Positions 1,239 to 36,454 of a stretch of 36,901 nt of DNA are shown here, piece after piece (the first letter of the stretch is position 1; each line of letters begins with the position of its first letter). Source of the stretch: Macrostomum lignano (Eukaryota); assembly GCA_002269645.1 (NCBI GenBank), contig NIVC01000325.1:1-36901 (forward strand). The letters run 5' to 3'. Made by a program: the position numbers and the translations under genes. The notes below the pieces were generated by a model. The model made no database searches, had not been told where the DNA came from, and saw only the letters and a program-made list of their open reading frames with translations.

Positions 1239-1519
1239 TATTATATATTATGATAGTTTTTTAAACTAGACGTGCCATAATTTGAGGTAATCTAAGTTCG
1301 CCCAGCTGGGCCGTCCGAGCTGCTCCGTCAGCCTCCATTTCGAAAAACTGCAGAACGAGGAATCAAAATTAGCAGTGACATTCGAATGAATGAAACAAAG
1401 TCTGCAGTGGAAGGAAATTTCGTCTCTGCCTGGTGCATTTTTTGCGGCGGAGATGTCTGTACAGTAGCAGCGGTTGCGGCAAGGATGTCGCCAGCGGATC
1501 ATGCAAAATTGATTGATTT

Positions 1520-13900: not shown

Positions 13901-15657
13901 CGTATCTGATATTACTACCGGCTATCTCGCTTGCTCACACCAAGCTTATTAAGTTGTTAGCTAATTGGCTGAAAAGCAGGCGGATTTAGAAAGGCATCGC
14001 TCTGCACGAATTGTGCCAAGTGACCATCAGTACTCCACTGCAAGCTCGGAAAAATTTCAATCACAAGCCGGAGAAACAGTTATTACGGAAATGAAAATTT
14101 GACACTATAAACTCATAGTAGAATAAAGTTATTGTTTGGAAAAAGCAATCATTAATAGGTAATTAGCGATCCTGAACAGTTTAGCCAGCCAATGGACAGC
14201 AAAGTATTCTTATTTCCGCTTGGAAAGCAAGCAGATGGCAACACTGAGGCGTATTGAAGAAAGGCAATGCTCTGCATATTAACGAGATAGAATGACATGG
14301 GAAGGAGGAGGGGGCGAGTTGCGAGACGAAACAGGAATCTCATTAGTTCCTTAGCGGGACAACGCTGCATTGAGCTGCCCTACCCGCATGCTATAGCTAG
14401 TGCTCCCCCCCCCCTACTCAAAATATTGCATCCAATTTTGACCGCACCTGTGTAGGCTTGTTGTATGCAGCTACATAGGTAGCGATATTGGACTGCGGGT
14501 CAGAGGATAAGCGTACGAAGCGGGGATGAGCAGAGTGCCTATCGCGAGTGCCCATACGCGATTTTTTTGGGACGTTGCGGTTGCAATTTGCATGCGGCCG
14601 CTGACCAGTATCGGGTAGCGGCCGCCACTGCGGAAGCCTCTTGCTGTTTTATGCAGCAGCCGGCAGTGTTTTAGTGGTGTCTTGCCCTCACCCTCCACCG
14701 ACACCCACAAAACTAAGGCAGTCTGGCATGATGGATGAGGGACAACTGCAGTTTCTACCGTTGCGAAGCGCTGGCCAACGCGCTAATGCAATTTGTAGCA
14801 GAGACTTTCAACCGAGAAAGATCGAGACAGACGAGAGAGTGAGTGGCAGTTGCTCACCCGACAATCAAATTGCAGCCCAAATTCATAGATTTCACCGTTT
14901 TATAAGTATATTTCTTGCGAAAATAGTGGCCGGAGTTTGGAGGCGAACGGACGGGGAGATAAAAATAGAGTAAAAAGAGGCGCAAGCAGAAGCAGAGAAA
15001 ACGAGATCGGCGGTCTTCAGCCAAGCGCAGTAGGGGTCCGCGATGTATGAATTTATTTTAATTTATTTCCCCCACATTTCCTCAATCCTTCCACCATAGC
15101 TCCCCTATTTCTGTCTCATCCCTTACCTCTTCATCCCTAACCTGAGCCCTCGCTTCCACGTCAGTTTCCATACAAGTGCGGCAGCAGCGCAAGCCAATTC
15201 TAGCAAACTGACCCCTCCTATCCACGGCTGTCCCGTCTAGCCACTCCGCCACTGACTCCCCGGCCTCAGTCTCTTCGCCCCGTCACTCGCTCCCAAACTC
15301 CTCTCCCCTGCCCCCAACCAACTCCCTCCAATCCCATTCAAGCTTCCTCCCTCATCACTTGCATCTCTCCCCCTGACTCCATATCCTTCTCTTTTTTTCA
15401 GCTCCTGCCAGCGATAGATTGCGAGCCGCCCCAGAGCCAGGCTCAAAACCGCTGTTTAAAATAGATGGGCGCAGAGACAAAAAGTTTGTCCTGCAGTAAT
15501 CTGTAAGGCAGCGCCGGCTAAATGGAATCTCGAAGAAGTCATTCGACGGTGGTGAAATGCTCGACAATGGCACCCAAATAGGAGCGCATTTTCGTCAAAA
15601 CTTTTCCGTTTCTGTCTTTGTTCCGGTCAGTCAGTTTTCATTTTTTAATACTCAGAG

Positions 15658-16983
15658 ATGTCGGCCCAAGCTGCTGCAGCCGTGTTTCCGGGTCAGTTCC
15701 TGGATTTGCCCAGCCTCTTGAGCTCAGGCTCCATCCTGGCCAGCGGTTCAGTGCTCAACTCCATGAATATCGGCCAGCTACCGCGGCTGGTCGAGAAGAA
15801 GAGCGACACCACCTATGTTCTAGTTGGAGTTGGTGGCGTAGGCGCTGGCACCGGCCATATGACAAGATTCACGGTGTTCTTCATTGTGTTGCAGTTTTTA
15901 TGCGGCGTGCTGTCAATCCTGGTGGGTCTGCTGGGCGTAGTCGTTGCCAGCATCCGCATACGCAAGCAGGTGGTCATCGCTGCGCTGTTGCTCTCCTCCG
16001 GACAGGCAATCCTATCCGCCATCTGCTTGACTTTCGGCGCTCTCGATACTAAAGACGCTTGGCACGACGCCAAACAGTCGATTGACAATTTTGCAAAGAT
16101 GCTGATGAACTGCATCAACACAGTGTGCTCGGTGTGCCTGTGCGTCTCGCTCACTCGACGGCTGTACCGCTACAGGGACTACGCAGTCTGTCGGTTCAAC
16201 CAGTTTCGGCCACCGGTTGTCGTCTGCACCGGGGCAGTCATCGCCACCTCGATTGCCAGTTTGAGCGCATTTGCATCTGGCATGATGCTCTCCGTGACGC
16301 AGAAGTACAACTACGCAGGCGGACTGCACATGGGCCTCCTAGGACTCACGCTAGGTCTAGCAATGGTTCTCAACCTGAAGCTGATGATTCATCAGGCCAG
16401 CACCATCGCATGCCTTTTGCTCATTGCGTTCACTCTGCTCAGCTCCTGCGCAGCCGCCTACACGGAGAGCGTCGAGCTCGATAACGTCGCCGGGACGCAG
16501 AGCACCAGAAAGCTGTACTACGGTTATATCATCAAGTCGGCAGTTGTTTACTTCTCCGCGTTGCTCAATATTGCAACTGTCGGTGCTTTGGCTCCATGCC
16601 AGTTTCTGCGCCTCTGGCACATGGCCGTCATTCAGGGCAACGCCGAGGACGAAGAAGAGGTCACAGCGGCTGCGGCAGCTGCGGCGGCTGACACCAGCAA
16701 TGCCGTCAACATCGGAGACCACGATGACGGAGGAGCGACCTTCAATCAGTTGTCTTCGGCAAACCCCAACTCGCCGCTGCTGCTGTCCGTCAGACAACTC
16801 TGGCGAGATCATCAGCAGCCGCAGCAGCATCCGCCAGTCTGCTGGGCAACCATACGGGGGCGGACAATGTCAGCGCTGCTTCCAACAGCACGACATTGCC
16901 TAGAATGCCGTACCAGCAACAGCAGCTCCATCACATGCAACAGCTTCATTCGCGGTTCGCTACTGGCGCTCAGGCGTGATTGA
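15658..16983 (+). CDS. Intronless multi-pass membrane protein (~7 TM), family unassigned, 441 aa
   Basis: Long ORF with GC3-rich codon usage like the other genes. Seven hydrophobic segments and an acidic/poly-Ala/Gln tail. Acceptor-like tttttaatactcag just before the ATG; AATAAA at 17074. Confidence 0.8.
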   Translation: MSAQAAAAVFPGQFLDLPSLLSSGSILASGSVLNSMNIGQLPRLVEKKSDTTYVLVGVGGVGAGTGHMTRFTVFFIVLQFLCGVLSILVGLLGVVVASIRIRKQVVIAALLLSSGQAILSAICLTFGALDTKDAWHDAKQSIDNFAKMLMNCINTVCSVCLCVSLTRRLYRYRDYAVCRFNQFRPPVVVCTGAVIATSIASLSAFASGMMLSVTQKYNYAGGLHMGLLGLTLGLAMVLNLKLMIHQASTIACLLLIAFTLLSSCAAAYTESVELDNVAGTQSTRKLYYGYIIKSAVVYFSALLNIATVGALAPCQFLRLWHMAVIQGNAEDEEEVTAAAAAAAADTSNAVNIGDHDDGGATFNQLSSANPNSPLLLSVRQLWRDHQQPQQHPPVCWATIRGRTMSALLPTARHCLECRTSNSSSITCNSFIRGSLLALRRD

Positions 16984-18382
16984 TAGTTCACTTGTTTGAA
17001 CTTTCTGGGTCTACAGGTGCTAATTAGGCGGTGATAGTTGAAAACTAAAGTTAAAATAGCTAACGGAAATTAAAATAAAATTAACCAACATCCAAAGTTG
17101 AAAGCTTATGGAAGAAAGACTGAAGACAGGCAAACCAAGAGAAGTCACTGGTAGAAGTTAACCAGGAGTTAATCAACCAATTAATCCTATCAGAATTTTA
17201 GACTAGATTTTATTAGCCATTGGATTAAACTTTGTTCTAAAAATCGTCGCTAATAATGTAACGGCACAACATATGTCTGCACACCGCTCTGTTAAATAGT
17301 TTAGCACTCTGCTGTTTATAGCGGGTCAGGCAGAAAGTATTCAGAATTGTTTAAGAAGAAAGCAATTTTCTGTTGCATTATCATTATCAACCATATGTTA
17401 TTCACATTCAATGTTAATTGCACGTAAGTAAGCGCCTAGATATTTTGATATAGCTAGTTATAATTGTCACGTACATGTAAGAATATGTTTTTTACTAACG
17501 ATTCAACTATTTTTGTATTTCCTTTAACGAGTACTACGAGCAGTCGAGCATGCTATATATATCATCATTATGCTGTACGTCTAAATTCTGGACTACAGCT
17601 TATTATCGAGTGAAAGCATATAGAAATTTTTAATTTTTAGTCACTTCAGCAATTGGTAATTTGTGTACAAGGACGTGAAACTGCTGACTATGCTGCTACT
17701 ATTATATTATAACTCATAGTCTCAGAATGATCGCTACATTAGTAATTGGCCCGTTTCTTATTATACCCCGTCCTTTATACACGAGCTAATTTCCGGCATA
17801 ATCTCTGCTACGTGTAAGCCAGTTAAGTGCGCGACAGCCCTCAGCTTGCACTCTGCGAGTACATTGTCGTTGTAGAGATGAAACCTGCTTTTTATTTATA
17901 TTTGATCTGCTTGGATTTTCTTTTTGTTAAAGCGTTTGTTACAATTAAAATACATGATTAAAGTTCCTCAACTTGAAGCAGATATCAGGAGTATGGCGGG
18001 TGCCCTTTTTGCTTGTACTTGCAGGATATAGCACAGAATATAGCGCTATGAATTATCATTCTCGAACTAGCTACATGTAGCTGTTATAGTTAGTCTAGGC
18101 GTGTTGAAACGGGGTGAAACGCACTGCATCTCGCCCGCTGCAATAATCTATGGCTATGGCCGACTTCCATAAGTAAAAAACCTCGTATGCATATAAGTAT
18201 CTAGTTAATGTTTCTACAACTTGTAGATTTTGAAAGTAAAGCTTAGTACTGCTAAATTATGCTTAGTATCAGTTACTTTTTTTAATTCGCAAAATAAGGA
18301 GTTTTGGCTCCGCCCCCACACCCCCGCAAGGGGGCTCAGCGCCCCTTGACCCCGCTTTCTTTTGACTTTGCCTTAGACATTT

Positions 18383-18643
18383 TCAGCGGGCCGTGAAACC
18401 GACTGAATACATTGGAGTAAATGGGATTTTACCATAGACAGTCTCAACGGGCCATGAAACCGACTGAATACATTGGAGTAAATGGGATTTTACCATAGAC
18501 AGTCTCAACGGGCCGTGAAGCCGACTGAATACATTGGAGTAAATGGGATTTTACCATAGACAGTCTCAACGGGCCGTGAAACCGACTGAATACATAGGAG
18601 TAAATGGGATTTTACCATAGACAGTCTCAACGGGCCGTGAAAC
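18383..18643 (+). repeat. 61-bp tandem repeat, ~4.3 copies
   Basis: Unit TCAACGGGCCGTGAAACCGACTGAATACATTGGAGTAAATGGGATTTTACCATAGACAGTC starts at 18383, 18444, 18505, 18566 and 18627 (partial). Confidence 0.97.
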
Positions 18644-19056
18644 GCGCCTCGGCGTTATAGCTCGTTTCTGCCCTCTGCAGCCCATCAATATATACCAGTA
18701 TACTAGACAAAAAGCCGATTCCCACCCCAGGAATACAAAAGCCATTCTAAATGATTATAATCACTCGCTTTTTTATTCCTTTATAATTTTTCTTCAATTT
18801 CTTCAGATTTCAATTCCGATCGTAACCATATGATCACGCTATAGAACTCAAAGCGTATAATTTTTTTGTTTAAGGATAAAAATATTTCTGAACAGACTCT
18901 GGGAAGCAGATAATATTAACTCGAGATTCGCCATAAATACAAGCATTAAGCAGCTCAGCACTGCAGCGATGGAGTAAAATTTCGCTGAGCTGCATGCAGA
19001 CTCGACGAGGAGCCACATCAATTTATAGTGTGAGATTGCTAATCGGATAAAGATGC

Positions 19057-20987
19057 CTATTGCAGCGAGGCGCAGTAAAGCTGGCCTACATGGAATTGCA
19101 GGGAGCAGTGAGTGAGCAGCGATATACATCGCTTCAGCATATAATTTTCATTGCAACCAACAATTTTGCGTTCACGCAATGAGAGGAAAAAGAGGGAATC
19201 GAGAGCGACATATCTGAAAAATGAAACAAGATCCTTCTGCACACCCGCACTTAGCAGCAGGTCTGACAAGCTGCTAGCACCACTTGCCCGCACACAACGG
19301 TTCTGTTCGCAAAAGATAGCCAAGCGTTTCCTGCTCACAGCTCTCAATAGCAACTCTTGCTCTCTTGCCATCGACTCACATCTTCCTTCCTCCCAGCAGT
19401 CCCCCGGGTCCATTTCCCGAAGGATTTCTACAAGAAGGATCGCGCTGAGGCCGGATTGACCTGCTGCTTGTTCTGGCTTGGCACAATATTAGAGAATAAA
19501 TTTGGGAACACATAACAGGGGGAACTCTGATGGGTCGATAAAAATGCATTTACATCAGTGGGGAGAGAGAGATCTGGGGAAAGACAGAGAAAAATGTAGT
19601 AGAGAAGTAAAGATCGTTTGAGACGCGGTGGGATCAGATGGAGTGAGGATGCGGTGGTTGGCTGGGTCTGACGCGTATAGACTAGATTTAGTGAATGATT
19701 TATACTGTCGTCAAACCGTGACAGCGACAGTCGTGGCACTGATGAGACGACTACCCACCGAACGATAAAAACGCTCAGTATCAAATATTGCTCGCTGAAA
19801 TTAATAGTTACTCCGAATAAGCTGAACACATATTCAAATCTATCATGGGTGTGCGAGGCCACTTCAATATTTCTGAATGTAGGTAAGGGGAACCTTTTAG
19901 CTAATGTAAGAATATCTAGACACAACAGGCCAGGGTTGTAGCCTAGTGGTTAGAGCGTCGCGGTCTCACGACTTGAAGGTCGGGGGTTTGATTCCTGATA
20001 CCATGGATTGGATTTGATTTCCATGAATTGGAAAAATTTGTCTTGAGTAAGTAAGACACCTAACCCTGCATCGCTTCAGTTCATACAGAATTATTTGGGG
20101 CAACTCAATTGAGGCGACTCCACAAGGCTGTAAAGGCCTTGTGTGGGGAGTGGGGAGCCCCCTCAGTCCTTGAACTGAACAGCCAGCAGCCTTCAGATGC
20201 GCCGCGCAATAGCTGCAGCTGCTGTCGGTTGTACATGTGCCCATTTGGACAGGTGTAATAAATTATTACTATTACTAATAGGCCTATATGGAAAATAAGC
20301 CAACTGCCTAGTTTTCTTCAGCAGTGCCTCAAGAAATACAATAAGCACAAAATTACAATTTGCTGATCGCACATAACAATTTCAAACAACCATCAGAGTG
20401 AAATACAAGAGTCCATTTACTAAAAAAATTGTTTAACCTTTCTTTAAGTATGTTTACAAATCTTGATTTGCAACTAAATACGGCTGAAACTATCCCATTA
20501 TCAAGTCTGAATTAACTAACATAATTTCCCCTAACACTCCAAAATTAATTACAATGTTTCTATGACGCAATTAAGAGCCTGCTTTTCAGTGTTGGTCATC
20601 ATAATTGTTTGCTAGTCATGACAAGTTTTATAATTACTTTAAAAATAAGTAGTCACTTGCCGATTAATATGACCTGGAGATGAGACCAATGGAATTGTTT
20701 TTGAAAAGCCGATTAGTTAGCTTGATTTTCTTTAAACTGTTTACTTTAAGTAGTATTGAATTCAATACATGCAGATTGATCAAATTTAGATAAATAAAAG
20801 CTAATATAGAGTAGATAATGCGCAAATATATTAGTAAATTTGTACTTAAGCTGTTAAAATTAATTTGGCACAAATAAAGATAAATGAGGCAAGTATTACG
20901 TGTTTCTGTTCTTATATTTTTAAGTGCAATATTTAACTTGCTTTTCAAAGAAACTGAAGCATTAATCTTGTAATACCCTTGTGTCAT
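19057..20987 (-). CDS. Candidate multi-exon gene of unknown function, head-to-head with fem-1 (exons ~20987-20674, 20506-20357, 19872-19673, then ~19470-19057; 3' end uncertain)
   Basis: Phase-consistent chain: AG|gtcata, aattcag|A...TT|gtaatt, cattcag|A...C|gtcaga, all frames open. The SINE falls inside predicted intron 2. All three CpGs in exon 1 are in Arg codons. No family recognised. Confidence 0.45.
19929..20280 (+). mobile_element. tRNA-derived SINE
   Basis: A-box TAGCCTAGTGGTTAGAGCG (19939-19957) and B-box GGTTTGATTCC (19985-19995). Acceptor and T stems do not pair, so it is not a tRNA. Core GTCTTGAGTAAGTAAGACACCTAACCCT resembles the V/Meta-SINE central motif. AT-rich (ATT/ACT)n tail. 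Confidence 0.75.
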
Positions 20988-23900
20988 CACCGTTAAAACA
21001 TTTCTTGTAAATAGATCCGAATTTTAAGTTGGTGTCGTTTCTATTTATGTTGCCGCAAATTTTCCAATTTTCTATTTTAAAGTCTTATAGTTTCCTTTAG
21101 AGTCATTGTCATAATGAAAGAGATTATTTTCCAATGAGTTGTTGATTGTACTGTGTAGGGTAGTGCATGTAAACAGGAAGTTGTGAGCTTGGCTTGTGTT
21201 GTTGCATTTGTGTCTAATCCTGATCCCTTATTGTTAAATTTCAGAAAAAATTATTCAACGTAGCAAAGTGATCCGTTAAATTTAGAGCAAGTATAAGTTT
21301 TTTGCAATGCAAAATAACTTTATTGCACTTTGTCGCAATGGCACTTCTTTCCAAAAATTTTATGATCAACTTCAAAAACGTGATCGACTGGAAAGACGAA
21401 GAATTGTTAATATGATTATTGAAGGAGCCACCTGTTTGATCAACTCATCTCGTTATGGTTTGTATAAATTTGTTTACAATATGCAATATATTTTATATTA
21501 ATTTATAATTATATGACTAGGGGCCTATGTTTACCACCAAATTCAAGACACTTATAGCCTATTTTTATTATGAAAAGGACATATTTAGGCCTACTTTGTC
21601 CTTTTATTTATTTATTTCCTTATATAACTTTTATTTTTAACTAGTTAATTTTTAATAACTTTTATAACCTGGACTAGGCCTTACCCCTAGGCCTAGGCTA
21701 TTATTATTAGTAGTATTGTGGTTAGGCCTATTCGTATTATATCATAACCTAGGTCAGTTTGAGTGCCTAGTCCCAAGTACAATATAGGTTAGATGTTAAT
21801 ATAACATGTGTAATGATGCTCTGTCTAGTACTTACATGGATATAAGCAAGCGTGATGATGCTCTGCAATAATAGGTTACTCTGTTTAGTATTGTGACATT
21901 CAGAGTTTGTGCTGCAGCTTGGGGTATGATGACAATCTTGAGTGTTTATATAGTGGGTATACAATATAAGTAGAGATATAGTTTGGTACAAGCTATATGC
22001 TCTCTCAGCATTATGACCCTTTGGCAAGAACTCCCTGTAGCCTAACAAGCTTCTACTGTAGTAGTGCTTCAATACTCTACGAATTTTGAGCAATAAAGGT
22101 ATGTTTTCTTAGAAACCAAACTCGTGCAAAATACTAGATAAATATTTTGTTTTAATGCATCAAATGTATTTGTTTTACCATACCAAATATTTTGTTTTAC
22201 TAGGCCTATGCAAAATAAATTGGAGAATTATTTTTTTGTTTTAATCATATGGAGGGGAAACCACTATATATAGGAGTGATTTTGTAGCAAATAAACCAAC
22301 TGTCTGATACTTGTAAGCAAATATTATGAGCAAAATAGCAGTTCAATCTATACATTTCAAAGTCTTTCAAGCTAAATAACAACTTATTCATTTGCAAAAC
22401 CTGAAAAACAATTCCAAGAAATTTGCTAAGAGAGGGAATTGGGACTAATTCTTGGAGATATACTAAGAGAGGCGCCGTGACCCTCTAGTCTCAGTGAACG
22501 CCCGATTAGGACTATCTACTAATTCATGTACCAGTACTAGACCACTTAGGCCATAAGCTACCAGAACATTACCAGAATGCTACTAGAAACACTACCAGAA
22601 ATGCTACTAAGAATGCTACCCAGAAATATTCAAATGAAATTCTAAGAAACAGTTAGAAACATTAAGGCAAGATTTAGTGTCAGCAATAGAAATTTAAGAG
22701 AGGAAATTAAAAACCTGTCACAGCTTGTGGCAATTAGTGGGATATTCAGAGGATAGAAGTAAGCCCTACGACACCCTTAGGAAAATATTTTAGAACATAT
22801 GAGTAGTTTTTTTTTAGATTTGCCAAGATTTAAAGTGCATTTAAGTTTTGTAACTTTTGCATAAAATAAAGAGGCCTAGTATGGCCTATTACATAATGTA
22901 AGTTACATTAAATGTAACAACAAAAAAAGGTTTTATTGTGTCCCAGGGCTCTTATTTATTCCTTTGCTTGCCTTACTAGCTGCCACCAAGCTGTTACAGG
23001 GGTTATTCCTTTTTGTTAATATTGCTGGTTATTATCTGCCTTTTACTAGTAGCATATGTACTTCTATTGGTAGCATATGTACTCTTATTGGTAGCGTCTG
23101 TACTTCTATTGGTAGTGTATGTACTTTTATTGTACTTTCTGGCCTGAGCGGTCTTTTTAGGCACTGTTTATCCTATTCCTATACTCCTCTAACGATATTA
23201 TTCTCAGTCCTGGGTGTTCCCGGGATCAGAGGGTCACAGCGCACTTCGCTGGGTATTCTGCCCTGAGGCGGGTTTCTCAGACTCTAAGCTTGGAGTTCTC
23301 TACCCTGTGGTAGGATCTCTGCCTCCTAAAGGCGGGTTACTAGACTCCTAAGTCTAGGATTTCTCGTTCTCTGAGAATGGACTGGACTCCCAATCTTGGG
23401 GCAACTCATAAACTACTATCCACTACTCGAAATAAGTAACACGAGCAAATACGAGCTCAAGGCTGATAGAATTTCTTCTCTACTGAGAATTGCTTATTGT
23501 TCAACGAGGAACAGACAAGAGCAAGTTGGTTTGCTAGGCTCTCAAATGGCAAAACAAAATAATAGCTTTTTTTGAATTTATACCTTTTCTAAGAAATGTA
23601 AACTACTAAAAGAAGAAGGCCTATTACAATTGTCATAATAGAAAAGTAAAGTTGCATAATTTTGAAATTCTATTATACATTATAGTCATTTCCAAATTTT
23701 TGGCATTTACCTAAAACTTTGCCTAAAAAATTCTAGCATACACTTAACACCTTCCTAACAAAGGTATGCATTGGCTTTGTATGCCAAAAGTTTGCCATGC
23801 ATATACCTGGCATAGTATATAGTTTATATAATCACATAGAAGAGTTTATTAAGTGGAAAAATATTAATAAGTTTATTTTTCTAGGTTGAATAATATTATG

Positions 23901-24560
23901 ATTAAACTTTTATCTAAGATCCTAGGATTGCAGGATTATAGAATTAGGATTAGGAATCAATTATTAAGTATATATCAAGGTCCATAGTCAGGAAGAAGGC
24001 ATGTATGCTAGAAATTTCTAGGGTAGAATCAATAAATTTGGCATATATGTTGGCATACAAAAAGTGATTCTGGTCTTTTGGTATACACACTTAATATTTT
24101 AATGTTTGATATGTATCTAAAGTTTAAAAAAATTACATTATCAATAGCACTTACAATAGTTGTCTATGAATTAAAATTTTAACAAAGATATACAAATTAT
24201 TTTTTGTTTGTTATATATATTCAAAATGGAAATACAAATATAATAGTTATTTTTAGTCTTTTATTTTATCTAATTGATATTAAATATCAAAATTGCTAGT
24301 CTAATAGTAACATTTCAAAATTGATAATTTGAAGCTTTGCATATTTGGTATACATTGGGATATATAAAGAATGTTCCAAACTATGGATCAAGGTTAGAAA
24401 AGGATAAGATTTTTGCAATTGGATAAAATTAAATTAACTGTTATCAACAACTATTATTCAGTAGTATTTATTGTATGAATTGCAAAACCAAATTTAGAAG
24501 TAGAATTGTAAGTTAAAAAATAATAAAGTGTCAAGAATAAACTTCCTATGTGCAAAAGCT
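20280..24560. other. CpG-depleted, TpA/CTAG-enriched domain spanning the 5' ends of fem-1 and the divergent candidate gene
   Basis: Manual count ~40 CpG in ~4.26 kb, and none in ~23505-24565, versus ~22 in 600 bp of AT-rich DNA at 9001-9600. Recurrent TAGGCC, GGCCTA and CCTAGG. Confidence 0.8.
21307..21457 (+). CDS. fem-1: FEM-1, coding exon 1 (AT-rich)
   Basis: MQNNFIALCRNG...RRIVNMIIEGATCLINSSRYG aligns with the FEM1 N-terminus (AVFNAARDG...TNGATPLLMAARYG) at the same length. In-frame upstream stop at 21283. Phase-1 donor TAT G|gtttgt joins exon 2 to give RYG-HLD. Confidence 0.82.
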
Positions 24561-24651
24561 TTTTATCGCTCCAAATATGGCTATGGGAAGTTATCGATCA
24601 GAGGTTTTTAAGCACAAATCAATGATTGTTACCTTTTTAGTAGTGACTTGA

Positions 24652-25071
<420 letters not shown>

Positions 25072-25118
25072 TGATTGAAGAGCAATTCTTGCTTGCCTGA
25101 TTGCTTGGCTTCGTCTGA

Positions 25119-26070
25119 CCTTAATTGACCCCTGCAGTTTTGTGGGCTCACCTCATTTGACCCCAGTTATTCCTATGCCTCTCACCTTAATTGACCCCTG
25201 TTATTCCTATGCCTCTCACCTTAATTGACCCCGGTTATTCCCATGCCTCTCACCTTAATTGACCCCTGTTATTCCCATGCCTCTCACCTTAATTGACCCC
25301 GATTATCCCCATGCCTCTCACCTTAATTGACCCCGATTATCCCCATGCCTCTCACCTTAATTGACCCCGGTTATCCCCATGCCTCTCACCTTAATTGACC
25401 CCGATTATCCCCATGCCTCTCACCTTAATTGACCCCGGTTATTCCCATGCCTCTCACCTTAATTGACCCCGGTTGTTTCCATGCCTCTCACCTTAATTGA
25501 CCCCGATTATCCCCATGCCTCTCACCTTAATTGACCCCAGTTATTCCCATGCCTCTCACCTTAATTGACCCCAGTTATTCCCATGCCTCTCACCTTAATT
25601 GACCCCAGTTATTCCCATGCCTCTCACCTTAATTGACCCCGATTATCCCCATGCCTCTCACCTTAATTGACCCCAGTTATTCCCATGCCTCTCACCTTAA
25701 TTGACCCCAGTTATTCCCATGCCTCTCACCTTAATTGACCCCAGTTATTCCCATGCCTCTCACCTTAATTGACCCCGATTATCCCCATGCCTCTCACCTT
25801 AATTGACCCCAGTTATTCCCATGCCTCTCACCTTAATTGACCCCAGTTATTCCCATGCCTCTCACCTTAATTGACCCCGATTATCCCCATGCCTCTCACC
25901 TTAATTGACCCCAGTTGTTCCCATGCCTCTCACCTTAATTGACCCCGATTATCCCCATGCCTCTCACCTTAATTGACCCCAGTTGTTCCCATGCCTCTCA
26001 CCTTAATTGACCCCGATTATCCCCATGCCTCTCACCTTAGTTGACCCCAGTTGTTCCCATGCCTCTCACC
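25119..26070 (+). repeat. 34-bp minisatellite, ~28 units, fem-1 intron 2
   Basis: Unit CCTTAATTGACCCCAGTTATTCCCATGCCTCTCA. Degenerate at the left edge; ends ~20 nt before the acceptor. Confidence 0.98.
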
Positions 26071-26092
26071 GAGCGCCAACCGCCCACGCCAG

Positions 26093-26387
26093 GTACCTGC
26101 TAGACGTCGGCGCCGACCACCAGCGCCAGAGCACGAAGGGCAACACGGCGCTGCACGACGCCGCCGAGAGCGGCAACCTGCGCATCCTCAAGCTGCTCCT
26201 TGACCGCGGCGCCCAGCTCCGGCCGGACATTCACGGCGTCTCCCCGCTGCTCGGCGCCGCCAATTCCGGCCACGCCAACATCGTGGACTACCTGGCCGGC
26301 CACCCGGAGCTCGTGCCCGACCCTGCGGAGCGAGTGCACGCTATGGAGCTGCTCGGCTGCACCCTGGTTGACAAGCGGCGCGACTGG
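26093..26387 (+). CDS. fem-1: FEM-1, exon 3
   Basis: gccag|G TAC ... TGG|gtgagt. KGNTALHDAAESG and AMELLGCTLVDKRRD correspond to FEM1C KGNTALHDCAESG and ALELLGATFVDKKRD. Confidence 0.96.
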
Positions 26388-26612
26388 GTGAGTCGGGGAA
26401 TTCCCGTTTTTGAGGAGCTTTGAGAAAGTTCAATTGGAATTTTTGCGCTTGAAAATATTTGGGAAATAATTGAGTTGATACCCTTTGTTCAAAAGGGAAT
26501 TCTCGGTGCCATGGTAGCTTTTATTCTATATGCGGAGATATAGGTTTCGAGACCTGGGGGAATTTGAGCTGGAATTCTCTTACTAAAATTCCCCTCCCCT
26601 CTCAAATTGAAG

Positions 26613-26870
26613 GTGAGCGGCCTCCGCCGCTGGCGCAAAGCGCTGCGCCTTCGCGAGGGCCTCCGGCTGCCAAAGGCGGCGGCGCCGCGGCACGAGGCGG
26701 CCTTCGCCGGCGCCAAGGAGTTTCAATCTGCAGCTGAGCTGGACGAGGTTGCCGCCGACCCGGAAGCTGTCCGATTGCAGGCCCTGATGGTGCGGGAGCG
26801 GATTCTGGGCTCCGAGCACCCCGACACAGCCTACTATATGCGCTACAGGGGCGCCGTGTACGCCGACCAG
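26613..26870 (+). CDS. fem-1: FEM-1, exon 4
   Basis: tgaag|GTG ... CAG|gtttgg. LQALMVRERILGSEHPDTAYYMRYRGAVYAD is a FEM1 hallmark. Confidence 0.96.
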
Positions 26871-26939
26871 GTTTGGCCACAGAAATTCTGCTTTGTTTTG
26901 CTGCCTCAATCTGATAACTGCTGCGATTGGGTCACTCTG

Positions 26940-27815
26940 GGTCAGTTTGGGTCATAAAGGTCAACTTTAAGTAATGCTAAACTCAAAAGGTCAGTTGGGG
27001 TCATGTTACGAGTTAAACTCAAATGAGTCATTGCTAAAGGTCAGTTAGGGTCATGCTAGACTCAGATGAGTCATTGTCAAAGGTCAGTTGGGGTCATACT
27101 AGACTCAGATGAGTCATTATTAAAGGTCAGTTGGGGTCATGCTAGACTCAGATGAGTCATTGTCAAAGGTCAGTTGGGGTCATGCTCGACTCAGATGAGT
27201 CATTGCTAAAGGTCAGTTGGTGTCATGCCGAGTCATGCTAGACTCAGATGAGTCATTGCTAAAGGTCAGCTTGGGTCATGCTAGACTCAGATGAGTCATT
27301 GCTAAAGGTCAGTTGGTGTCATGCTCGACTCAGATGAGTCATTGCTAAAGGTCAGTTGGGGTCATGCTCGACTCAGATGAATCATTGCTAAAGGTCAGTT
27401 GGTGTCATGCTCGACTCAGATGAGTCATTGCTAAAGGTCAGTTGGGGTCATGCTCGACTCAGATGAGTCATTGCTAAAGGTCAGTTGGTGTCATGCCGAG
27501 TCATGCTAGACTCAGATGAGTCATTGCTAAAGGTCAGCTTGGGTCATGCTAGACTCAGATGAGTCATTGTCAAAGGTCAGTTGGGGTCATGCTCGACTCA
27601 GATGAGTCATTGTCAAAGGTCAGTTGGGGTCAGGCTAGACTCAGATGAGTCATTGTCAAAGGTCAGTTGGGGTCAGGCTAGACTCAGATGAGTCATCGTG
27701 AAAGGTCAGTTGGGGTCATGTTATACTCAGATGAGTCATTGCTAAAGGTCAGTTGGGGTCATGTTATACTCAGATGAGTCATTGCTAAAGGTCAGTTGGG
27801 GTCAGGCTAGACTCA
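26940..27815 (+). repeat. 43-bp minisatellite, ~20 units, fem-1 intron 4
   Basis: Unit GACTCAGATGAGTCATTGCTAAAGGTCAGTTGGGGTCATGCTA. First ~2 units are degenerate. Confidence 0.97.
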
Positions 27816-27920
27816 CAAGTCAGTCATAAATTTACAATGTCGGCCTAAGTAAGCCCTGCAGGCTCTCAAGAACCGAACAAACCAGTGAATTGCAATCTCT
27901 GATTTTGCCACATCAACCAG

Positions 27921-28100
27921 GGCCAATTCGAGAGCTGCCTTCGCCTGTGGCTGTACGCCCTGGAGCTGCAGCTGCGGCACGCCAGCCCCTTCTTTCCCGC
28001 TAGCCTGGCCTCCTTCAACAACTTCATCGAACTGTTCGCCTTCATGCTGAGCTCCAATGCCAGGCCGCTGGCAGCTCAGTGGACCGAAGTGCTCGGGCAG
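27921..28100 (+). CDS. fem-1: FEM-1, exon 5; not in the ORF track
   Basis: accag|GGC ... CAG|gtgagc, 60 codons. GQFESCLRLWLYALELQ...SFNNFIELFAFML matches FEM1 GNFKRCINLWKYALDMQ...SFAELFSFML. Confidence 0.93.
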
Positions 28101-28222
28101 GTGAGCAGTTCAGTTAAAGTTATGCTAATTGCCAATATTTGAAGTAAAAAACGCTCTCTTGCTACTGCCGAGAGCCAGTAGTACAATAAGGAAACAAATC
28201 AAACTGTCTCCAATCCCCCAAG

Positions 28223-28663
28223 GTCCTCTGCCGTTGCGTGTTGGAACTCGCCAAGTCTTTCAAGGCTCTCGGCCTGCCGTTCCGGACCGCCGTCGCTGCA
28301 GACGGCACTGCCGCGGCCGCTTCTGCTGGAGACTCCGCTGCTGCTGCTGCAGTTGCCAGCGAAGCACCTTCGACTAATTCAGCAGCCACCGCCACGGCCG
28401 CAGCCGCCGCGGCCACCGTTGCGTCGCCGGAGGAGCGGCCGCTGCAGTACGCCGACCGCCTGCTTGAGTGCCTGGCCACCCTCACCGCCCTGCTCGTGCG
28501 GGCCGCCGCTGCCGCCTCTTCCGCCTCCTCGGCTGCCTCTGCTGACGTCGCTGATGATCCACCGGACTTCGCCCTGCCACTCGCAGTCAGGCAGGCCCTG
28601 TTCGACGTGCGCTGCGTTGCCAGCCCGTTGTCTGGCAATCGCCTCATTCACTTCGCTTGTCAG
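28223..28663 (+). CDS. fem-1: FEM-1, exon 6 (with Ala-rich insertion)
   Basis: cccaag|GTC ... CAG|gtaatt, 147 codons. VLCRCVLEL, LECLATLTALL and GNRLIHFAC lie at FEM1-equivalent positions. Confidence 0.88.
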
Positions 28664-28676
28664 GTAATTCTGCAGT

Positions 28677-28843
28677 TTTTGTATGACCGCGTGGAACTGG
28701 ATGGTGCTTTTGTATGACCATGTGGAACTGGATGGTGCTTTTGTATGACCATGTGGAACTGGATGGTGCTTTTGTATGACCATTTGGAACTGGATGGTGC
28801 TTTTGTATTGTATGACCGTGTGGAACTGGATGGTGCTTTTGTA
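28677..28843 (+). repeat. 31-bp minisatellite, ~5 units, fem-1 intron 6
   Basis: Unit TTTTGTATGACCATGTGGAACTGGATGGTGC. Confidence 0.95.
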
Positions 28844-28846
28844 AAA

Positions 28847-29938
28847 CCCGGAACTATATGAGTACACCCGGAACTGTATGAGCACACCCGGAACTGTATG
28901 AGCACACCCGGAACTGTATGAGTACACCCGGAACTGTATGAGCACACCCGGAACTGAATGAGCACACCCGGAACTGAATGAGCACACCCGGAACTGAATG
29001 AGCACACCCGGAACTGTATGAGCACACCCGGAACTGTATGAGCACACCCGGAACTGAATGAGCACACCCGGAACTGAATGAGCACACCCGGAACTGTATG
29101 AGCACACCTGGAACTGTATGAGTACACCCGGAACTGAATGAGCACACCCGGAACTGAATGAGCACACCCGGAACTGAATGAGCACACCCGGAACTGAATG
29201 AGCACACCCGGAACTGTATGAGCACACCTGGAACTGTTTGAGCACACCCGGAACTGTTTGAGCAGATCCCGAACTGTATGAGCACACTCGGAACTGTATG
29301 AGCACACTCGGAACTGTATGAGCACACTCGGAACTGTATGAGCACACCCGGAACTGAATGAGCACACCCGGAACTGTATGAGCACACCCGGAACTGTATG
29401 AGCACACCCGGAACTGAATGAGCACACCCGGAACTGAATGAGCACACCCGGAACTGTATGAGCACACCTGGAACTGTATGAGTACACCCGGAACTGAATG
29501 AGCACACCCGGAACTGAATGAGCACACCCGGAACTGAATGAGCACACCCGGAACTGAATGAGCACACCCGGAACTGTATGAGCACACCTGGAACTGTTTG
29601 AGCACACCCGGAACTGTTTGAGCAGATCCCGAACTGTATGAGCACACTCGGAACTGTATGAGCACACTCGGAACTGTATGAGCACACTCGGAACTGTATG
29701 AGCACACTCGGAACTGTATGAGCACACGCGGAACTGAATGAGCACACCTTGGAACTGTATGAGCACACTCGGAACTGTATGAGCACTCGCGGAACTGAAT
29801 GAGCACACGCGGAACTGTATGAGCACACCCGGAACTGTATGAGCACACTCGGAACTGTATGAGCACACCCGGAAGTGTATGAGCACACCCGGAACTGTAT
29901 GAGCACACCCGGAACTGTATGAGCACACCCGGAACTGC
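28847..29938 (+). repeat. 20-bp minisatellite, ~54 units, fem-1 intron 6
   Basis: Unit CCCGGAACTGTATGAGCACA. Ends ~15 nt before the exon 7 acceptor. Confidence 0.98.
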
Positions 29939-29953
29939 ATGCCCTCCCCGCAG

Positions 29954-30613
29954 TCGAGCCGCCGGTCGCGCATCACGGAGCGCTACCCGGCCACCCAGCT
30001 GCCGTGTCCGGCCACTGTCCGACTGTTGCTCCGGCTTGGTGCCGGCGCCGACTCCGTCAATCGCGACGGCGACACGCCGCTTCACTTGGCGACCCGCGCC
30101 CGCAGCGTGGATTCGGTTGGCGCCCTCCTGAGCGCCGGCGCGCACTCTGACTTGCCCAACTCTGCCGGCAAGTCGCCGCTGGGCGAGCTGCTCCTGGTGT
30201 CGGCCGCCGCCGGCAGCAACGAGGTCGCTTTGGACACCGGCGGCGCCGACGACTCGGCGGCCACCAGCTCGATCGTCTGCCTGCTGCGCTCGGCCCGGTT
30301 CACCCGCCTGTCCTGCCTGTGCGCCACCGCATTCGCCAAGTCCGGCCAGCCGCTGCCGCCCGGCTGCTCCGGCTGGGTGCGCGACACCCTGCTGGCCCAC
30401 TGCCCGCCTCAGCGGCAGGCCGGCGCCGCTTCCACTCTAACGGCGACTTCGTCTCTATCGAACTCGAGCTTATCGAGCGGAGCGTCGCCGCCTTCGCCGC
30501 CGAGCGCCGGCGCGGGTCCATCGATGTCCTACCAGCAGCAGCAGCAGCAGCACCAGCAGTCGACGGCCTCTTCCCCTGATCAGCGCGACCGCCAGCAGCA
30601 GCAGTCTGTCTAA
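29954..30613 (+). CDS. fem-1: FEM-1, terminal exon 7 (C-terminal ankyrin repeats, BC/VHL-box-like motif, Ser/Pro/Gln tail)
   Basis: ccgcag|TCG. RYPATQLPCPATVRLLLRLGA...NRDGDTPLHLA and TRLSCLCATAF (cf. TLQCLAARVI). Stop TAA at 30611-30613; AATAAA at 30661. Confidence 0.93.
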   Translation, partial: SSRRSRITERYPATQLPCPATVRLLLRLGAGADSVNRDGDTPLHLATRARSVDSVGALLSAGAHSDLPNSAGKSPLGELLLVSAAAGSNEVALDTGGADDSAATSSIVCLLRSARFTRLSCLCATAFAKSGQPLPPGCSGWVRDTLLAHCPPQRQAGAASTLTATSSLSNSSLSSGASPPSPPSAGAGPSMSYQQQQQQHQQSTASSPDQRDRQQQQSV

Positions 30614-30935: not shown

Positions 30936-31406
30936 CGCTGCAGTTACCAGTCTGTGTTTGCAGACAAAATGGGTGATTTTATATGAGAATATTACAATAA
31001 GATTCCAAGACTAATTTGCTTGGTTTGCCTTTCCAATCCATAATTGATAACTTTGCTAATACAAACCATATTTTCCTTGCTTAATTTATGCCTGAAGACC
31101 CAATATTTCTAGGTTCAGGTAGATTCACTGGATTTGTTTAACTTTTTAATAAGATTTGTAATTTTGTGTCTACTTTTTTGTCTTGTCAATGCTTCGTGTG
31201 AATATCAGTTCGGCTTGCTCAGTGCTATCTCTGTGTTTCAATCACTTCGAGTTTTAATTAAATTGCTCCAAATTTGAAGGATTTTTTAGTTCTCTTAAAT
31301 ATGCCAGTTCTTTATATGGATATCATCACTAACTGCTTTAATTGTATTTTAGTTCGAGCTTTAGGAGGTTGAACCCTGTTCATGCCCTCCCTGTAGTGAA
31401 CTGTTT

Positions 31407-36275: not shown

Positions 36276-36454
36276 ATTGAGCTGTTTACATAGAAATGAA
36301 AAGTCGTATCGTTTTAAAATATCTATTTTGTGCAGAAGAATTTTGTAAAATATTCATTTGTATTCTCATATGTGATTTATTTTAGGATAAATATTTTATC
36401 GAATAACATCAGAGCAGTTGTTGTGTTGCTATAAGCATCTCAGTAGTCTTTGCT

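What the first reader, a model, noticed from the sequence alone, without database searches (positions are those of the whole stretch)
20280..24560. An inverted CpG island: sharply bounded CpG desert with an apparent CG-to-TA double-conversion signature over two gene 5' ends
Seen: CpG falls to ~9 per kb, and to zero over ~1.05 kb (23505-24565), versus ~35 per kb in other AT-rich DNA here, then returns abruptly at fem-1 exon 2. CTAG, CCTAGG and TAGGCCTA recur. At 21671-21755, GGACTAGGCC...CCTAGGCCTAGGCTATTATTATTAGTAGTATTG reads as ordinary GC-rich DNA (CCGG, CCCGGG, GTCGTCGTCGGCGGCG) if TA is read as CG. TG and CA remain common, so this is not fungal RIP-type CpA loss. Known: CpG methylation yields TG or CA in one step and then removes its own target. 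Inference: reaching TA needs a second step (paired deamination resolved toward T, or continued modification at former CpG sites), targeted to a domain around a bidirectional promoter. This would be a candidate localised germline cytosine modification or hypermutation system. Caveat: similar TAGGCCTA-rich DNA may occur in other methylated animal genomes, so novelty needs checking.
Basis: partly seen in the sequence, partly recalled or inferred. Interest (0 to 1): 0.85.

Follow-up and report, generated by a model that had tools for sequence, protein, structure and literature searches.

The report
Transition-hypermutable CpG desert in flatworm intron
The CpG-free, AT-rich block is real and lies around exon 1 and intron 1 of the fem-1 gene of the flatworm Macrostomum lignano, but comparison with three other copies of the locus shows CpGs are lost one base at a time (to TG or CA), never by a CG-to-TA double change, inside a domain where only transitions are about five times faster than next door.

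Summary
The window is the whole contig NIVC01000325.1 of Macrostomum lignano (GCA_002269645.1). The finding covers the upstream DNA, exon 1 (21307-21457) and intron 1 (21458-24727) of fem-1 (BOX15_Mlig034082g2).

There are 40 CpG in 4,281 bp (9.3/kb, o/e 0.37, against 0.87-1.02 in the flanks). A 1,062-bp stretch has no CpG where 17 are expected. TAGGCCTA, GGCCTA and CTAG are enriched over dinucleotide shuffles.

The interpretation mostly fails. Three paralogous or allelic contigs carry the same desert, so it is neither a mis-join nor a recent insertion. Of 19 variable CpG columns, 11 are CG/CA, 5 CG/TG, 3 CG/AG and none CG/TA. Of 468 TA columns, 46 vary with CA or TG and none with CG. TpA o/e (0.98) is not raised where CpG loss is complete (0.95). 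Only one gene 5' end is annotated.

What is there is a domain with a transition-specific excess. Transversions match the flank (0.81% against 0.84%). Transitions are 4.8 times higher (3.06% against 0.64%), biased towards C>T and strongest at CpG. M. lignano keeps DNMT1 and DNMT3 and has low 5mC, so a focal germline cytosine-methylated patch is the best explanation. This is inferred, not shown.

The TAGGCCTA motif is a separate, unexplained feature that changes by whole-unit indels.

The parts
20280..21306 (+). AT-rich DNA upstream of the fem-1 start codon (promoter or 5' UTR region). Mild CpG depletion and no CTAG excess.
   Evidence: CpG o/e 0.55. CTAG 2 against 2.9 expected. Transitions 1.27% and transversions 0.78% against the paralogue.
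21307..21457 (+). fem-1 exon 1 (MQNNF...SSRY + G), AT-rich coding sequence inside the domain.
   Evidence: Annotated product P0127/BOX15_Mlig034082g2 starts here. tblastn gives a weak match to fem-1 N-termini. GC3 is 0.24 against 0.80 in exon 2, and all five CpG are in Arg CGN codons.
21458..24566 (+). Core of the CpG desert: intron 1 up to the point where CpG resumes. This is the transition-hypermutable domain.
   Evidence: Intron 1 as a whole (21458-24727) has CpG o/e 0.29; this core without the indel segment has 0.17. Transitions 3.06% and transversions 0.81%, against 0.64% and 0.84% in the non-coding flank. Transition:transversion is about 45:5 in 21500-22925.
22935..23628 (.). 694-bp segment present in the window and L007, absent in L005. 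L006 lacks 22925-23800. Flanked by the direct repeat ATTGT. Probably a transposon insertion or a microhomology deletion.
   Evidence: Alignment gaps and junctions. GC 41% with 13 CpG, which is most of the CpG in intron 1.
23506..24566 (.). CpG-free kilobase.
   Evidence: Longest CpG-free gap in the window, with 17 CpG expected. GC 25.5%, TpA o/e 0.95.
24567..24727 (+). End of intron 1, where CpG returns. Holds ATG 24658, which one paralogue's gene model (P0126) uses as its start.
   Evidence: The CpG at 24567, 24595 and 24672 vary between copies.
24728..25071 (+). fem-1 exon 2, GC-rich and CpG-replete.
   Evidence: GC3 0.80. 0-1 differences between copies.
20279..20286 (.). TAGGCCTA at the left edge.
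   Evidence: Conserved in all copies.
21586..21593 (.). TAGGCCTA.
21675..21700 (.). TAGGCC...CCTAGGCCTAGGC cluster. L005 carries one extra 5-bp TAGGC/CTAGG unit.
21723..21730 (.). TAGGCCTA.
22201..22208 (.). TAGGCCTA that is polymorphic as a unit. The window and L007 have TA-GGCC-TA; L005 and L006 have only TA.
   Evidence: 6-bp indel GGCCTA.
22872..22888 (.). AGGCCTAgtatGGCCTA.
23617..23623 (.). AGGCCTA near the right end of the 694-bp segment.

Best explanation
The block is an old, in-place compositional domain around exon 1 and intron 1 of the Macrostomum lignano fem-1 gene. It is neither an insertion nor an assembly error.

Inside it cytosines are lost by ordinary single transitions at a much raised rate. 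The loss is strongest at CpG and weaker at CpA and CpT. It is near the flank rate at CpC. Transversions run at the flank rate. CpG therefore decays to TG or CA. TG and CA then decay independently to TA, the common sink of all pyrimidine-purine steps. Nothing converts CG to TA in one event.

The most likely cause (inferred) is that this about 3-kb stretch is one of the few germline cytosine-methylated patches in a genome that keeps DNMT1 and DNMT3 but has little 5mC overall. Deamination of 5mC at CG, and possibly at non-CG sites, would drive the C>T excess.

The recurrent TAGGCCTA/GGCCTA motif is a separate feature. It is gained or lost as whole short units and is not decayed CpG-rich DNA.

Shown: the desert, its presence in four contigs, the single-step changes, the transition-only excess and the C>T bias. 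Inferred: methylation as the cause.
For: Identity and age.
- The window is NIVC01000325.1 of M. lignano.
- The desert is present with the same flanks in contigs NIVC01001487.1, NIVC01003567.1 and NIVC01003506.1.
- Exon 1 inside it is annotated, has GC3 0.24 against 0.80 for exon 2, and keeps CpG only in Arg codons. This points to long residence under the local bias plus selection.

Single steps.
- 19 variable CpG columns: 11 CG/CA, 5 CG/TG, 3 CG/AG and 0 CG/TA.
- TA columns vary with CA (23) and TG (23), never with CG.

Transition-only excess (window against NIVC01001487.1).
- Intron core: transitions 72 of 2355, transversions 19 of 2355.
- Non-coding flank 17000-20279: transitions 19 of 2967, transversions 25 of 2967.
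- Fisher test: transitions P=1e-11, transversions P=1.0.

Context.
- CpG sites differing: 11 of 17 in the core against 1 of 216 in the flank.
- Across the whole desert, per-C differences are CG 0.265, CA 0.095, CT 0.073 and CC 0.026, against 0.007-0.010 in every context of the pooled controls.
- The 3' neighbour matters and the 5' neighbour does not.

Direction.
- In the polarisable subset, S>W transitions are 16 of 1053 sites and W>S are 10 of 2495 (odds ratio 3.8, P=0.0008).
- The flank shows no such bias.

Literature.
- M. lignano retains DNMT1 and DNMT3 and has low 5mC.
- Its genomic methylation pattern is said to be unknown (PMC11292947, PMC9246332, PMC10658182, all citing Wasik et al. 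2015).
Against: - No methylation data were available, so 5mC on this stretch is an inference.
- Most differences lie on one unpolarised branch (window lineage against L005/L006). A uniform T>C rate acting on this AT-rich composition would mimic much of the apparent CG>CA~CT>CC ranking (my calculation: chi-square about 7.8, 3 d.f.). So the context ranking rests on the equilibrium argument, the CC/GG excess (o/e 1.3) and a small polarised subset.
- About 85% of the excess transitions are at non-CpG sites. Classical animal CpG methylation alone does not explain this.
- The domain covers a 5' intron while the GC-rich exons downstream keep CpG o/e about 1. Invertebrate gene-body methylation usually looks the other way round.
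- L005 and L006 share most differences from the window, so they are not independent replicates.
- Only one locus was seen.
Confidence: 0.6

Rival explanations
1. One reading: CpG sites in the domain are converted to TpA by a paired or double deamination, or by continued modification of the former CpG site.
For: CpG is nearly absent while TA-containing palindromes (CTAG, TAGGCCTA) are enriched. CA/TG to TA changes are about ten times more frequent per site than in the flanks.
Against: - No CG/TA difference in 19 variable CpG columns or 468 TA columns.
- The only adjacent double changes in the desert are GC/AG at 21052 and CT/TA at 23807.
- CT/TT transitions are raised as much as CA/TA, so the second step is not tied to ex-CpG sites.
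- TpA o/e is 0.95 in the CpG-free kilobase.
- Back-converting TA to CG gives an implausible 130 CpG/kb.
- YRGGCCYR precursors number 2 in 32.6 kb outside, against 5 TAGGCCTA in 4.3 kb inside.
Confidence: 0.03
2. Methylation-independent deamination. The AT-rich, easily melted (or peculiarly packaged or transcribed) DNA at the 5' end of the gene exposes cytosines. C>T rises in all contexts and feeds back on AT content.
For: Most excess transitions are non-CpG (61 of 72). The domain is the most AT-rich DNA in the window. The slight G>C and T>A skew on the coding strand (+0.04, -0.025) has the sign expected for transcription-associated asymmetry.
Against: - It does not explain a CpG-specific deficit (o/e 0.17) when other AT-rich DNA here has o/e about 1.
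- The excess stops about 160 bp before exon 2, although transcription continues. Downstream non-satellite gene DNA shows no excess.
- The skews are no larger than in the flanks.
Confidence: 0.15
3. Inherited composition. The block is a stack of old transposon or MITE relics, or DNA methylated only in the past. Its low CpG was set before or elsewhere, and nothing special acts on it now.
For: - One 694-bp segment behaves as an insertion or deletion with a 5-bp direct repeat.
- TAGGCCTA looks like a TA-target excision footprint, and one site is polymorphic as TA against TAGGCCTA.
- There is a weak 12-13 of 16 terminal inverted repeat at 21723/22878.
Against: - The transition excess is seen in differences that arose after the copies separated, so the process acted recently.
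- Exon 1 shares the bias.
- No repeat of the block occurs elsewhere in the held DNA.
- No transposon protein or RNA family hit was found.
Confidence: 0.1
4. Differential homogenisation. GC-biased gene conversion among the four copies keeps the flanks and exons GC- and CpG-rich and nearly identical. Intron 1 escapes conversion and drifts to the AT-rich mutational equilibrium.
For: Flanks and exons are 0-1.4% diverged and the desert 2-4.8%. Relationships among the copies are mosaic along the locus, which shows that conversion or recombination occurs.
Against: - Transversion divergence is the same in the non-coding flank and the intron core (0.84% against 0.81%), so time since separation is the same.
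- Conversion bias does not produce a CpG-specific deficit.
- The mosaic pattern shows that exchange also happens inside the desert.
Confidence: 0.07
5. Artefact: an assembly mis-join, contaminant DNA or a recent foreign AT-rich insertion.
For: Abrupt compositional change. PacBio-type 1-bp indel errors are visible between the window and L007.
Against: The same block with the same flanks is present in four separately assembled contigs. It contains the annotated exon 1, which splices in phase to exon 2.
Confidence: 0.01

Closest known systems
Mosaic ('fractional') invertebrate DNA methylation, seen as CpG-depleted methylated domains beside CpG-replete unmethylated DNA (as in Ciona, oyster and annelids; reviewed in PMC9246332, PMC11292947)
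   Same: A bounded domain of low CpG o/e sits in a genome whose other DNA has o/e about 1. CpG changes are single transitions to TG or CA. The organism retains DNMT1 and DNMT3.
   Different: The domain covers the upstream DNA, exon 1 and first intron rather than the gene body; the downstream exons keep their CpG. It is far more AT-rich than its surroundings. Most of the excess transitions are at non-CpG cytosines. Methylation itself was not observed.
Fungal RIP relics and AT-rich isochores (Neurospora, Leptosphaeria), which are also targets of CG and non-CG methylation
   Same: A sharply bounded AT- and TpA-rich block in a GC-balanced genome. C>T transitions depend on the 3' neighbour. The locus exists in several copies.
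   Different: The RIP substrate index is not met ((CpA+TpG)/(ApC+GpT) is 1.12-1.17, not below 1.03). CpG rather than CpA is the most affected context. Equally duplicated flanks are untouched. No RID-type enzyme is known in animals (my knowledge).
AID/APOBEC-type cytosine deaminase hypermutation (kataegis, retroelement editing)
   Same: Localised C>T/G>A excess without extra transversions.
   Different: No dependence on the 5' neighbour (0.065-0.105 for all four bases). No strand-coordinated runs; C/T and G/A differences are interleaved and split evenly between lineages.
Dependence of cytosine deamination on local GC content (DNA melting model; Fryxell and co-workers, cited from memory)
   Same: Higher C>T rate in AT-rich DNA, with a self-reinforcing loss of GC.
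   Different: The effect here is far larger and sharply bounded. Other AT-rich DNA in the same window shows neither CpG loss nor a transition excess.
Tc1/mariner-type excision footprints (TA + terminal bases + TA), considered for the TAGGCCTA motif
   Same: An 8-bp palindrome of the form TA-NN-N'N'-TA. One site is polymorphic as TA against TA-GGCC-TA. A TA-flanked palindromic element with GG...CC termini exists at 1172-1236 of the same contig.
   Different: No family of such elements was found in the DNA held. The best terminal-repeat pair inside the desert is no better than chance. Some motif changes look like tandem slippage of a 5-bp unit instead.

Membership tests
CpG-depleted methylated domain (mosaic animal DNA methylation) | CpG o/e far below that of neighbouring DNA of similar base composition | tested here: met
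   0.37 for the finding and 0.17 for the intron core without the indel segment, against 0.97 in AT-rich 17001-19000.
CpG-depleted methylated domain (mosaic animal DNA methylation) | CpG sites change by single transitions to TG or CA, at a rate far above other sites and above flank CpG | tested here: met
   16 of 19 variable CpG columns are CG/TG or CG/CA. 11 of 17 CpG sites differ in the core against 1 of 216 in the flank. Caveat: the differences are unpolarised and include CpG gains.
CpG-depleted methylated domain (mosaic animal DNA methylation) | The organism encodes maintenance and de novo DNA methyltransferases | not testable with these tools
   Literature only: DNMT1 and DNMT3 are retained and 5mC is low in M. 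lignano (PMC11292947, PMC9246332, PMC10658182).
CpG-depleted methylated domain (mosaic animal DNA methylation) | 5mC is actually present on the domain in germline DNA | not testable with these tools
   No bisulfite or long-read modification data are accessible.
CpG-depleted methylated domain (mosaic animal DNA methylation) | The domain coincides with the transcribed gene body (canonical gene-body methylation) | tested here: not met
   Exons 2 onwards have CpG o/e 0.9-1.17. Depletion is confined to the upstream DNA and intron 1.
   0 of 19 variable CpG columns and 0 of 468 TA columns.
   0.98 overall against 0.78-1.01 in controls, and 0.95 in the CpG-free kilobase. The excess is confined to 21501-22000 (1.42) and 23001-23500 (1.31). 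Statistical power is low.
   2 in 32.6 kb outside against 5 TAGGCCTA in 4.3 kb inside.
RIP-like repeat-induced point mutation | Composite RIP indices: TpA/ApT high and (CpA+TpG)/(ApC+GpT) below about 1.03 | tested here: not met
   1.08 and 1.17 in the desert. Controls give similar values.
RIP-like repeat-induced point mutation | Mutation follows duplication: all duplicated DNA of sufficient length is hit | tested here: not met
   The flanks are duplicated in the same four contigs and show no transition excess.
AID/APOBEC-type deaminase editing | Specificity for the 5' neighbour of the edited C | tested here: not met
   Variable fraction by 5' base is 0.09, 0.091, 0.065 and 0.105. The 3' base decides.
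AID/APOBEC-type deaminase editing | Strand-coordinated clusters confined to one copy | tested here: not met
   C/T and G/A differences are interleaved. 26 AT alleles lie in the window lineage and 26 in the other.
TA-target transposon excision footprint (for TAGGCCTA) | Presence/absence polymorphism of TA against TA + end bases + TA | tested here: met
   At 22203, GGCCTA is present in the window and L007 and absent in L005 and L006. This is one site only, and a microhomology deletion fits equally well.
TA-target transposon excision footprint (for TAGGCCTA) | A matching element family with GG...CC termini and TA duplications | tested here: inconclusive
   One TA-flanked 27-bp-stem palindrome at 1172-1236. 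There is no second copy in the held DNA. The 21723/22878 pair (12-13 of 16) is at chance level.

The most novel reading that the evidence does not exclude
A flatworm has small, sharply bounded genomic islands in which cytosines are modified in CG and also in CA and CT contexts. The cause could be dense CG plus non-CG methylation by its DNMT1/DNMT3, or another cytosine-directed activity set by the 3' neighbour. These islands mutate by C>T ten to sixty times faster than the rest of an otherwise unmethylated genome. That would be an animal counterpart of the methylated AT-rich relics of fungi, sitting at the 5' end of a conserved gene and marked by a recurrent TAGGCCTA unit.
Probability: 0.12. 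Interest if true: 0.7.

Novelty: new variant of a known kind. Interest (0 to 1): 0.4.

Why it matters
The proposed new chemistry (CG to TA in one event) is not there, which removes the main reason for the high first-stage score.

What remains is still useful. The review literature found here says the genomic pattern of DNA methylation is unknown for any free-living flatworm, although Macrostomum lignano keeps DNMT1 and DNMT3. This locus gives a concrete, testable prediction of where 5mC should sit: 21.4-24.6 kb of NIVC01000325.1 and its three paralogues, but not the flanks.

It also shows that paralogue comparison in this duplicated genome can read local mutation spectra. If the transition-only excess at non-CpG cytosines holds up genome-wide, it would point to focal non-CG methylation or another cytosine-directed process in an animal germline.

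It also shows how a local mutational regime can reshape a coding exon. Exon 1 has GC3 0.24 and exon 2 has 0.80, within one gene.

Tried and rejected
- Organism identification through fem-1. The best hit was only 75% identical and unnamed, exact ORF look-ups failed, and contigs of distant homologues were uninformative. It was solved through the neighbouring AA_kinase gene.
- Self-similarity of the block against the whole window gave no significant repeats. My first impression of a long foldback at 22460-23250 reduced to a 17 of 19 inverted match plus unrelated short tandem repeats.
- Rfam and tRNA scans of the window found nothing.
- A Pfam scan of neighbouring ORFs for a second, divergent gene found nothing apart from the AA_kinase gene.
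- A literature search for TAGGCCTA returned only primers and unrelated oligonucleotides. No newer M. lignano methylome paper was found. Wasik et al. 2015 is not held.
- NUMT or viral origin was considered from the base composition only. It was not pursued once the block was found in four contigs with a spliced exon inside.
- Telomere-like TTAGG/CCTAA enrichment (15 sites) is only about 1.7 times expectation by my estimate and was dropped.
- A 'survivor' model for TAGGCCTA (a stable GGCC core plus a TA sink) was rejected. YR-flanked GGCC is 16-26% per side outside but 58-83% inside.
- The apparent CG>CA~CT>CC ranking from unpolarised differences was downgraded. A uniform T>C rate on this composition predicts a similar ranking, except for CpC.
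- A search for TA|GG...CC|TA elements found only chance-level pairs and one palindrome.

Full report
**1. What the window is**

The sequence is animal DNA with GC-rich exons and introns full of minisatellites. A neighbouring single-exon AA_kinase gene (9978-11030, minus strand) is 99% identical to a Macrostomum lignano protein.

The fem-1 product P0127 (BOX15_Mlig034082g2) lies on a contig of exactly 36,901 bp. The look-up returns NIVC01000325.1 of assembly GCA_002269645.1, with the CDS at 21307-30613. The window is therefore that whole contig.

The annotated protein starts MQNNFIALCRNG...SSRYG|HLDFV. This confirms an AT-rich exon 1 at 21307-21457, spliced in phase 1 to exon 2 at 24728. Intron 1 is 21458-24727. 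No other gene is called in 11307-36901, so the 'two gene 5' ends / bidirectional promoter' part of the finding has no support.

**2. The observation**

- 20280-24560 holds 40 CpG (9.3/kb, o/e 0.37). Non-satellite controls have 35-50/kb and o/e 0.87-1.02, including DNA of similar AT content.
- The gap between the CpGs at 23505 and 24567 (1,062 bp) is the longest in the window. Seventeen CpG are expected there.
- The right edge is abrupt: 26 CpG in 24501-25000.
- The left edge is not abrupt. 20280-21300 has o/e 0.55, and exon 1 keeps five CpG, all in Arg CGN codons.
- The core is intron 1. Its o/e is 0.29, or 0.17 once a 694-bp indel segment holding 13 of its CpG is removed.
- The motifs are significantly enriched over dinucleotide-preserving shuffles of the region: TAGGCCTA 4 against 0.10, GGCCTA or TAGGCC 15 against 1.39, CTAG 27 against 15.8.
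- Ten of 12 GGCC sit in a TAGGCC or GGCCTA context.
- The CTAG excess is confined to intron 1.

**3. Composition alone cannot decide the mechanism**

TpA o/e is 0.98 in the desert, against 0.78-1.01 in controls. It is 0.95 in the CpG-free kilobase. The only raised sub-windows are 21501-22000 (1.42) and 23001-23500 (1.31). TG and CA o/e are 1.07 and 1.06.

The CpG deficit (about 70 sites) is small beside about 490 TA and about 500 TG+CA. Neither a TA gain nor a TG/CA gain of that size would be visible.

Reading TA as CG is unconstrained. Applied to intron 1, it gives 130 CpG/kb, GC 57% and o/e 1.62. That is about twice the densest stretch of that length in the window.

**4. The decisive comparison**

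The assembly holds three more copies of the locus:

| Copy | Contig | Relation to the window |
|---|---|---|
| L007 | NIVC01003506.1 | 99.5% identical; mostly 1-bp indels |
| L005 (with L004) | NIVC01001487.1 | diverged copy |
| L006 | NIVC01003567.1 | diverged copy |

All carry the same AT-rich, CpG-poor block between the same flanks. That excludes a mis-join, contamination or a recent insertion.

I aligned 18644-25146 across the four copies.

- In 20280-24726, 53 dinucleotide columns hold CG in at least one copy, and 19 of them vary. The alternatives are 11 CG/CA, 5 CG/TG, 3 CG/AG and no CG/TA.
- Of 468 columns with TA, 404 are invariant, 23 vary with CA, 23 with TG and none with CG.
- Only two adjacent double substitutions occur in the desert: GC/AG at 21052 and CT/TA at 23807. 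Neither is CG/TA.
- If even 30% of CpG changes were double conversions, seeing 0 of 19 would have P=0.001.

CpG is therefore lost one base at a time, and TA is reached by a second, independent transition.

**5. What is special about the domain**

Rates below compare the window with NIVC01001487.1.

| Region | Transversions | Transitions |
|---|---|---|
| Non-coding flank 17000-20279 | 0.84% | 0.64% |
| Upstream part 20280-21306 | 0.78% | 1.27% |
| Intron core 21458-24566 | 0.81% | 3.06% |

- Transversions do not differ between core and flank (Fisher P=1.0). The copies have therefore been apart equally long everywhere.
- Transitions differ strongly between core and flank (Fisher P=1e-11).
- In 21500-22925 the transition:transversion ratio is about 45:5.
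- The comparison with L006 gives the same picture. It is not independent, because L005 and L006 share most differences from the window.

By 3' neighbour, the fraction of C sites that differ across the whole desert (20280-24726 without exon 1) is CG 0.265, CA 0.095, CT 0.073 and CC 0.026. In the pooled control regions it is 0.007-0.010 in every context. In the intron core alone, 11 of 17 CpG sites differ. The 5' neighbour has no effect.

One caution applies. These differences are unpolarised. With so few C and so many T, a uniform T>C rate would produce a similar ranking, except for CpC. I therefore do not lean on the exact ranking.

Three lines of evidence are independent of that problem:

- CpG o/e of 0.17 and CC/GG o/e of 1.3 (against about 1 outside) require context-dependent loss.
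- In the subset that can be polarised by a third lineage, S>W transitions are 3.8 times more frequent per site than W>S (16 of 1053 against 10 of 2495, P=0.0008). The flank shows no such bias.
- AT alleles are split evenly between the lineages (26 and 26) and C/T and G/A changes are interleaved. This looks like a steady process in all copies, not one editing burst.

Exon 1 shares the bias (GC3 0.24 against 0.80 in exon 2; FYMINK residues 38% against 26-33% in orthologues). This argues for long residence in the regime.

**6. Best explanation**

A transition-only, C>T-biased, CpG-preferring excess is the expected footprint of cytosine methylation followed by deamination. Here it is confined to a bounded domain in a genome whose other DNA shows no CpG hypermutability.

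Reviews state that M. lignano, unlike planarians and parasitic flatworms, retains DNMT1 and DNMT3 and has low overall 5mC. They also state that its genomic pattern is unknown. A focal methylated patch would fit.

This cause is inferred. No methylation data could be consulted. About 85% of the excess transitions are at non-CpG sites, which needs either non-CG methylation or an added methylation-independent component.

Rivals:
- Deamination of easily melted or transcribed DNA without methylation. This does not explain the CpG specificity or the stop before exon 2.
- Inherited transposon composition. The excess arose after the copies split.
- Escape from GC-biased homogenisation. Transversion depth is equal.
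- RIP. The indices are not met and the duplicated flanks are untouched.
- AID/APOBEC editing. There is no 5' context and there are no strand runs.

**7. The TAGGCCTA motif**

The motif is not decayed GC-rich DNA. YR-flanked GGCC octamers number 2 in 32.6 kb outside the desert, against 5 in 4.3 kb inside it. Substitution within motif copies is no different from background (my count).

The motif changes by whole units:
- A 6-bp GGCCTA indel at 22203 (TA against TA-GGCC-TA).
- An extra 5-bp TAGGC unit in L005 at 21692.
- A clustered change creating TTAGGGCC at 20246-20251 in L005 and L006.
- CCTGG against CTAGG at 23807.

The form TA-GG-CC-TA is what a TA-target transposon with GG...CC ends would leave on excision. 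One TA-flanked perfect palindrome with such ends sits at 1172-1236. I found no family of such elements, and slippage or microhomology deletion fits some of the events equally well. I leave the motif unexplained.

**8. Verdict**

The double-conversion mechanism and the bidirectional-promoter setting are not supported. The weaker idea of a localised cytosine-directed mutational regime is supported.

The feature is best filed as a variant of the known CpG-depleted methylated domain of mosaic-methylated invertebrates. It is unusual in its position (5' intron rather than gene body), its extreme AT-richness and its non-CpG transition excess. It is of moderate interest, mainly as a directly testable prediction for where 5mC lies in this flatworm.

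Noticed in passing
window 232-1241 and 1172-1236: About 1 kb here is absent from the paralogous contig; the empty site is at L004 18646-18648. Near its right end is a perfect palindrome with 27-bp stems (TTAGGCTGTCTTGGGCAGAAATGAGCG / aaacaga / reverse complement), flanked by TA. This is a likely mobile-element insertion with a terminal hairpin.
   Followed up: partly
window 22935-23628 (L006: 22925-23800): A 694-bp segment of intron 1 is present in two copies and absent in L005. It is flanked by the 5-bp direct repeat ATTGT. L006 has a different, larger gap. The segment holds short tandem repeats (23049-23132) and most of the intron's CpG.
   Followed up: partly
window about 10,000-17,000: This stretch is almost identical between the copies (0-2 differences per 500 bp), while the DNA on either side differs by 1-1.5%. 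It includes an unannotated GC-rich 441-aa multi-membrane-span ORF (15658-16983) with no Pfam hit. Either recent homogenisation or strong constraint could explain this.
   Followed up: no
window 9978-11030 (minus strand): Single-exon, GC-rich AA_kinase / isopentenyl-phosphate-kinase-like gene (P0121). Only three distant homologues (31-34% identity) reached E<1e-10 in 5.8 billion proteins. This is an unusual gene for an animal.
   Followed up: no
window 21307-21457 and 24728-25071: Two exons of one gene have opposite codon composition: exon 1 has GC3 0.24 and exon 2 has GC3 0.80. The exon-1 peptide is much more diverged from other fem-1 proteins (about 30-40% identity) than exon 2 (75%).
   Followed up: yes
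fem-1 introns 2 onwards (25147-26070, 27017-27815, 28677-29941), plus 2541-5488, 31406-31975 and 32668-36278: Minisatellites with 20-43-bp units fill the introns and flanks. Their copy number differs between the four copies, so the gene spans 4,984 to 9,307 bp.
   Followed up: partly
L006 20341-21909: One paralogous contig carries a THAP + P-element-transposase-like ORF (457 aa) about 5.4 kb downstream of fem-1.
   Followed up: no
window 20238-20251: Four differences lie within 14 bp at the left edge of the domain. The window has GTGCCCATTTGGACAGG where L005 and L006 have GAGCCCATTAGGGCCGG. This looks like a complex, possibly templated event that creates a motif-like TTAGGGCC.
   Followed up: no
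window against L007 (whole alignment): The two contigs differ almost only by 1-bp deletions, which are typical long-read consensus errors. They may be the same allele assembled twice rather than true paralogues.
   Followed up: no
L006 gene model (P0126); window 24658: One copy is annotated with a start at ATG 24658, inside the end of intron 1 (MATVIDSK...), although its exon 1 is intact. This suggests an alternative 5' end just where CpG returns.
   Followed up: no
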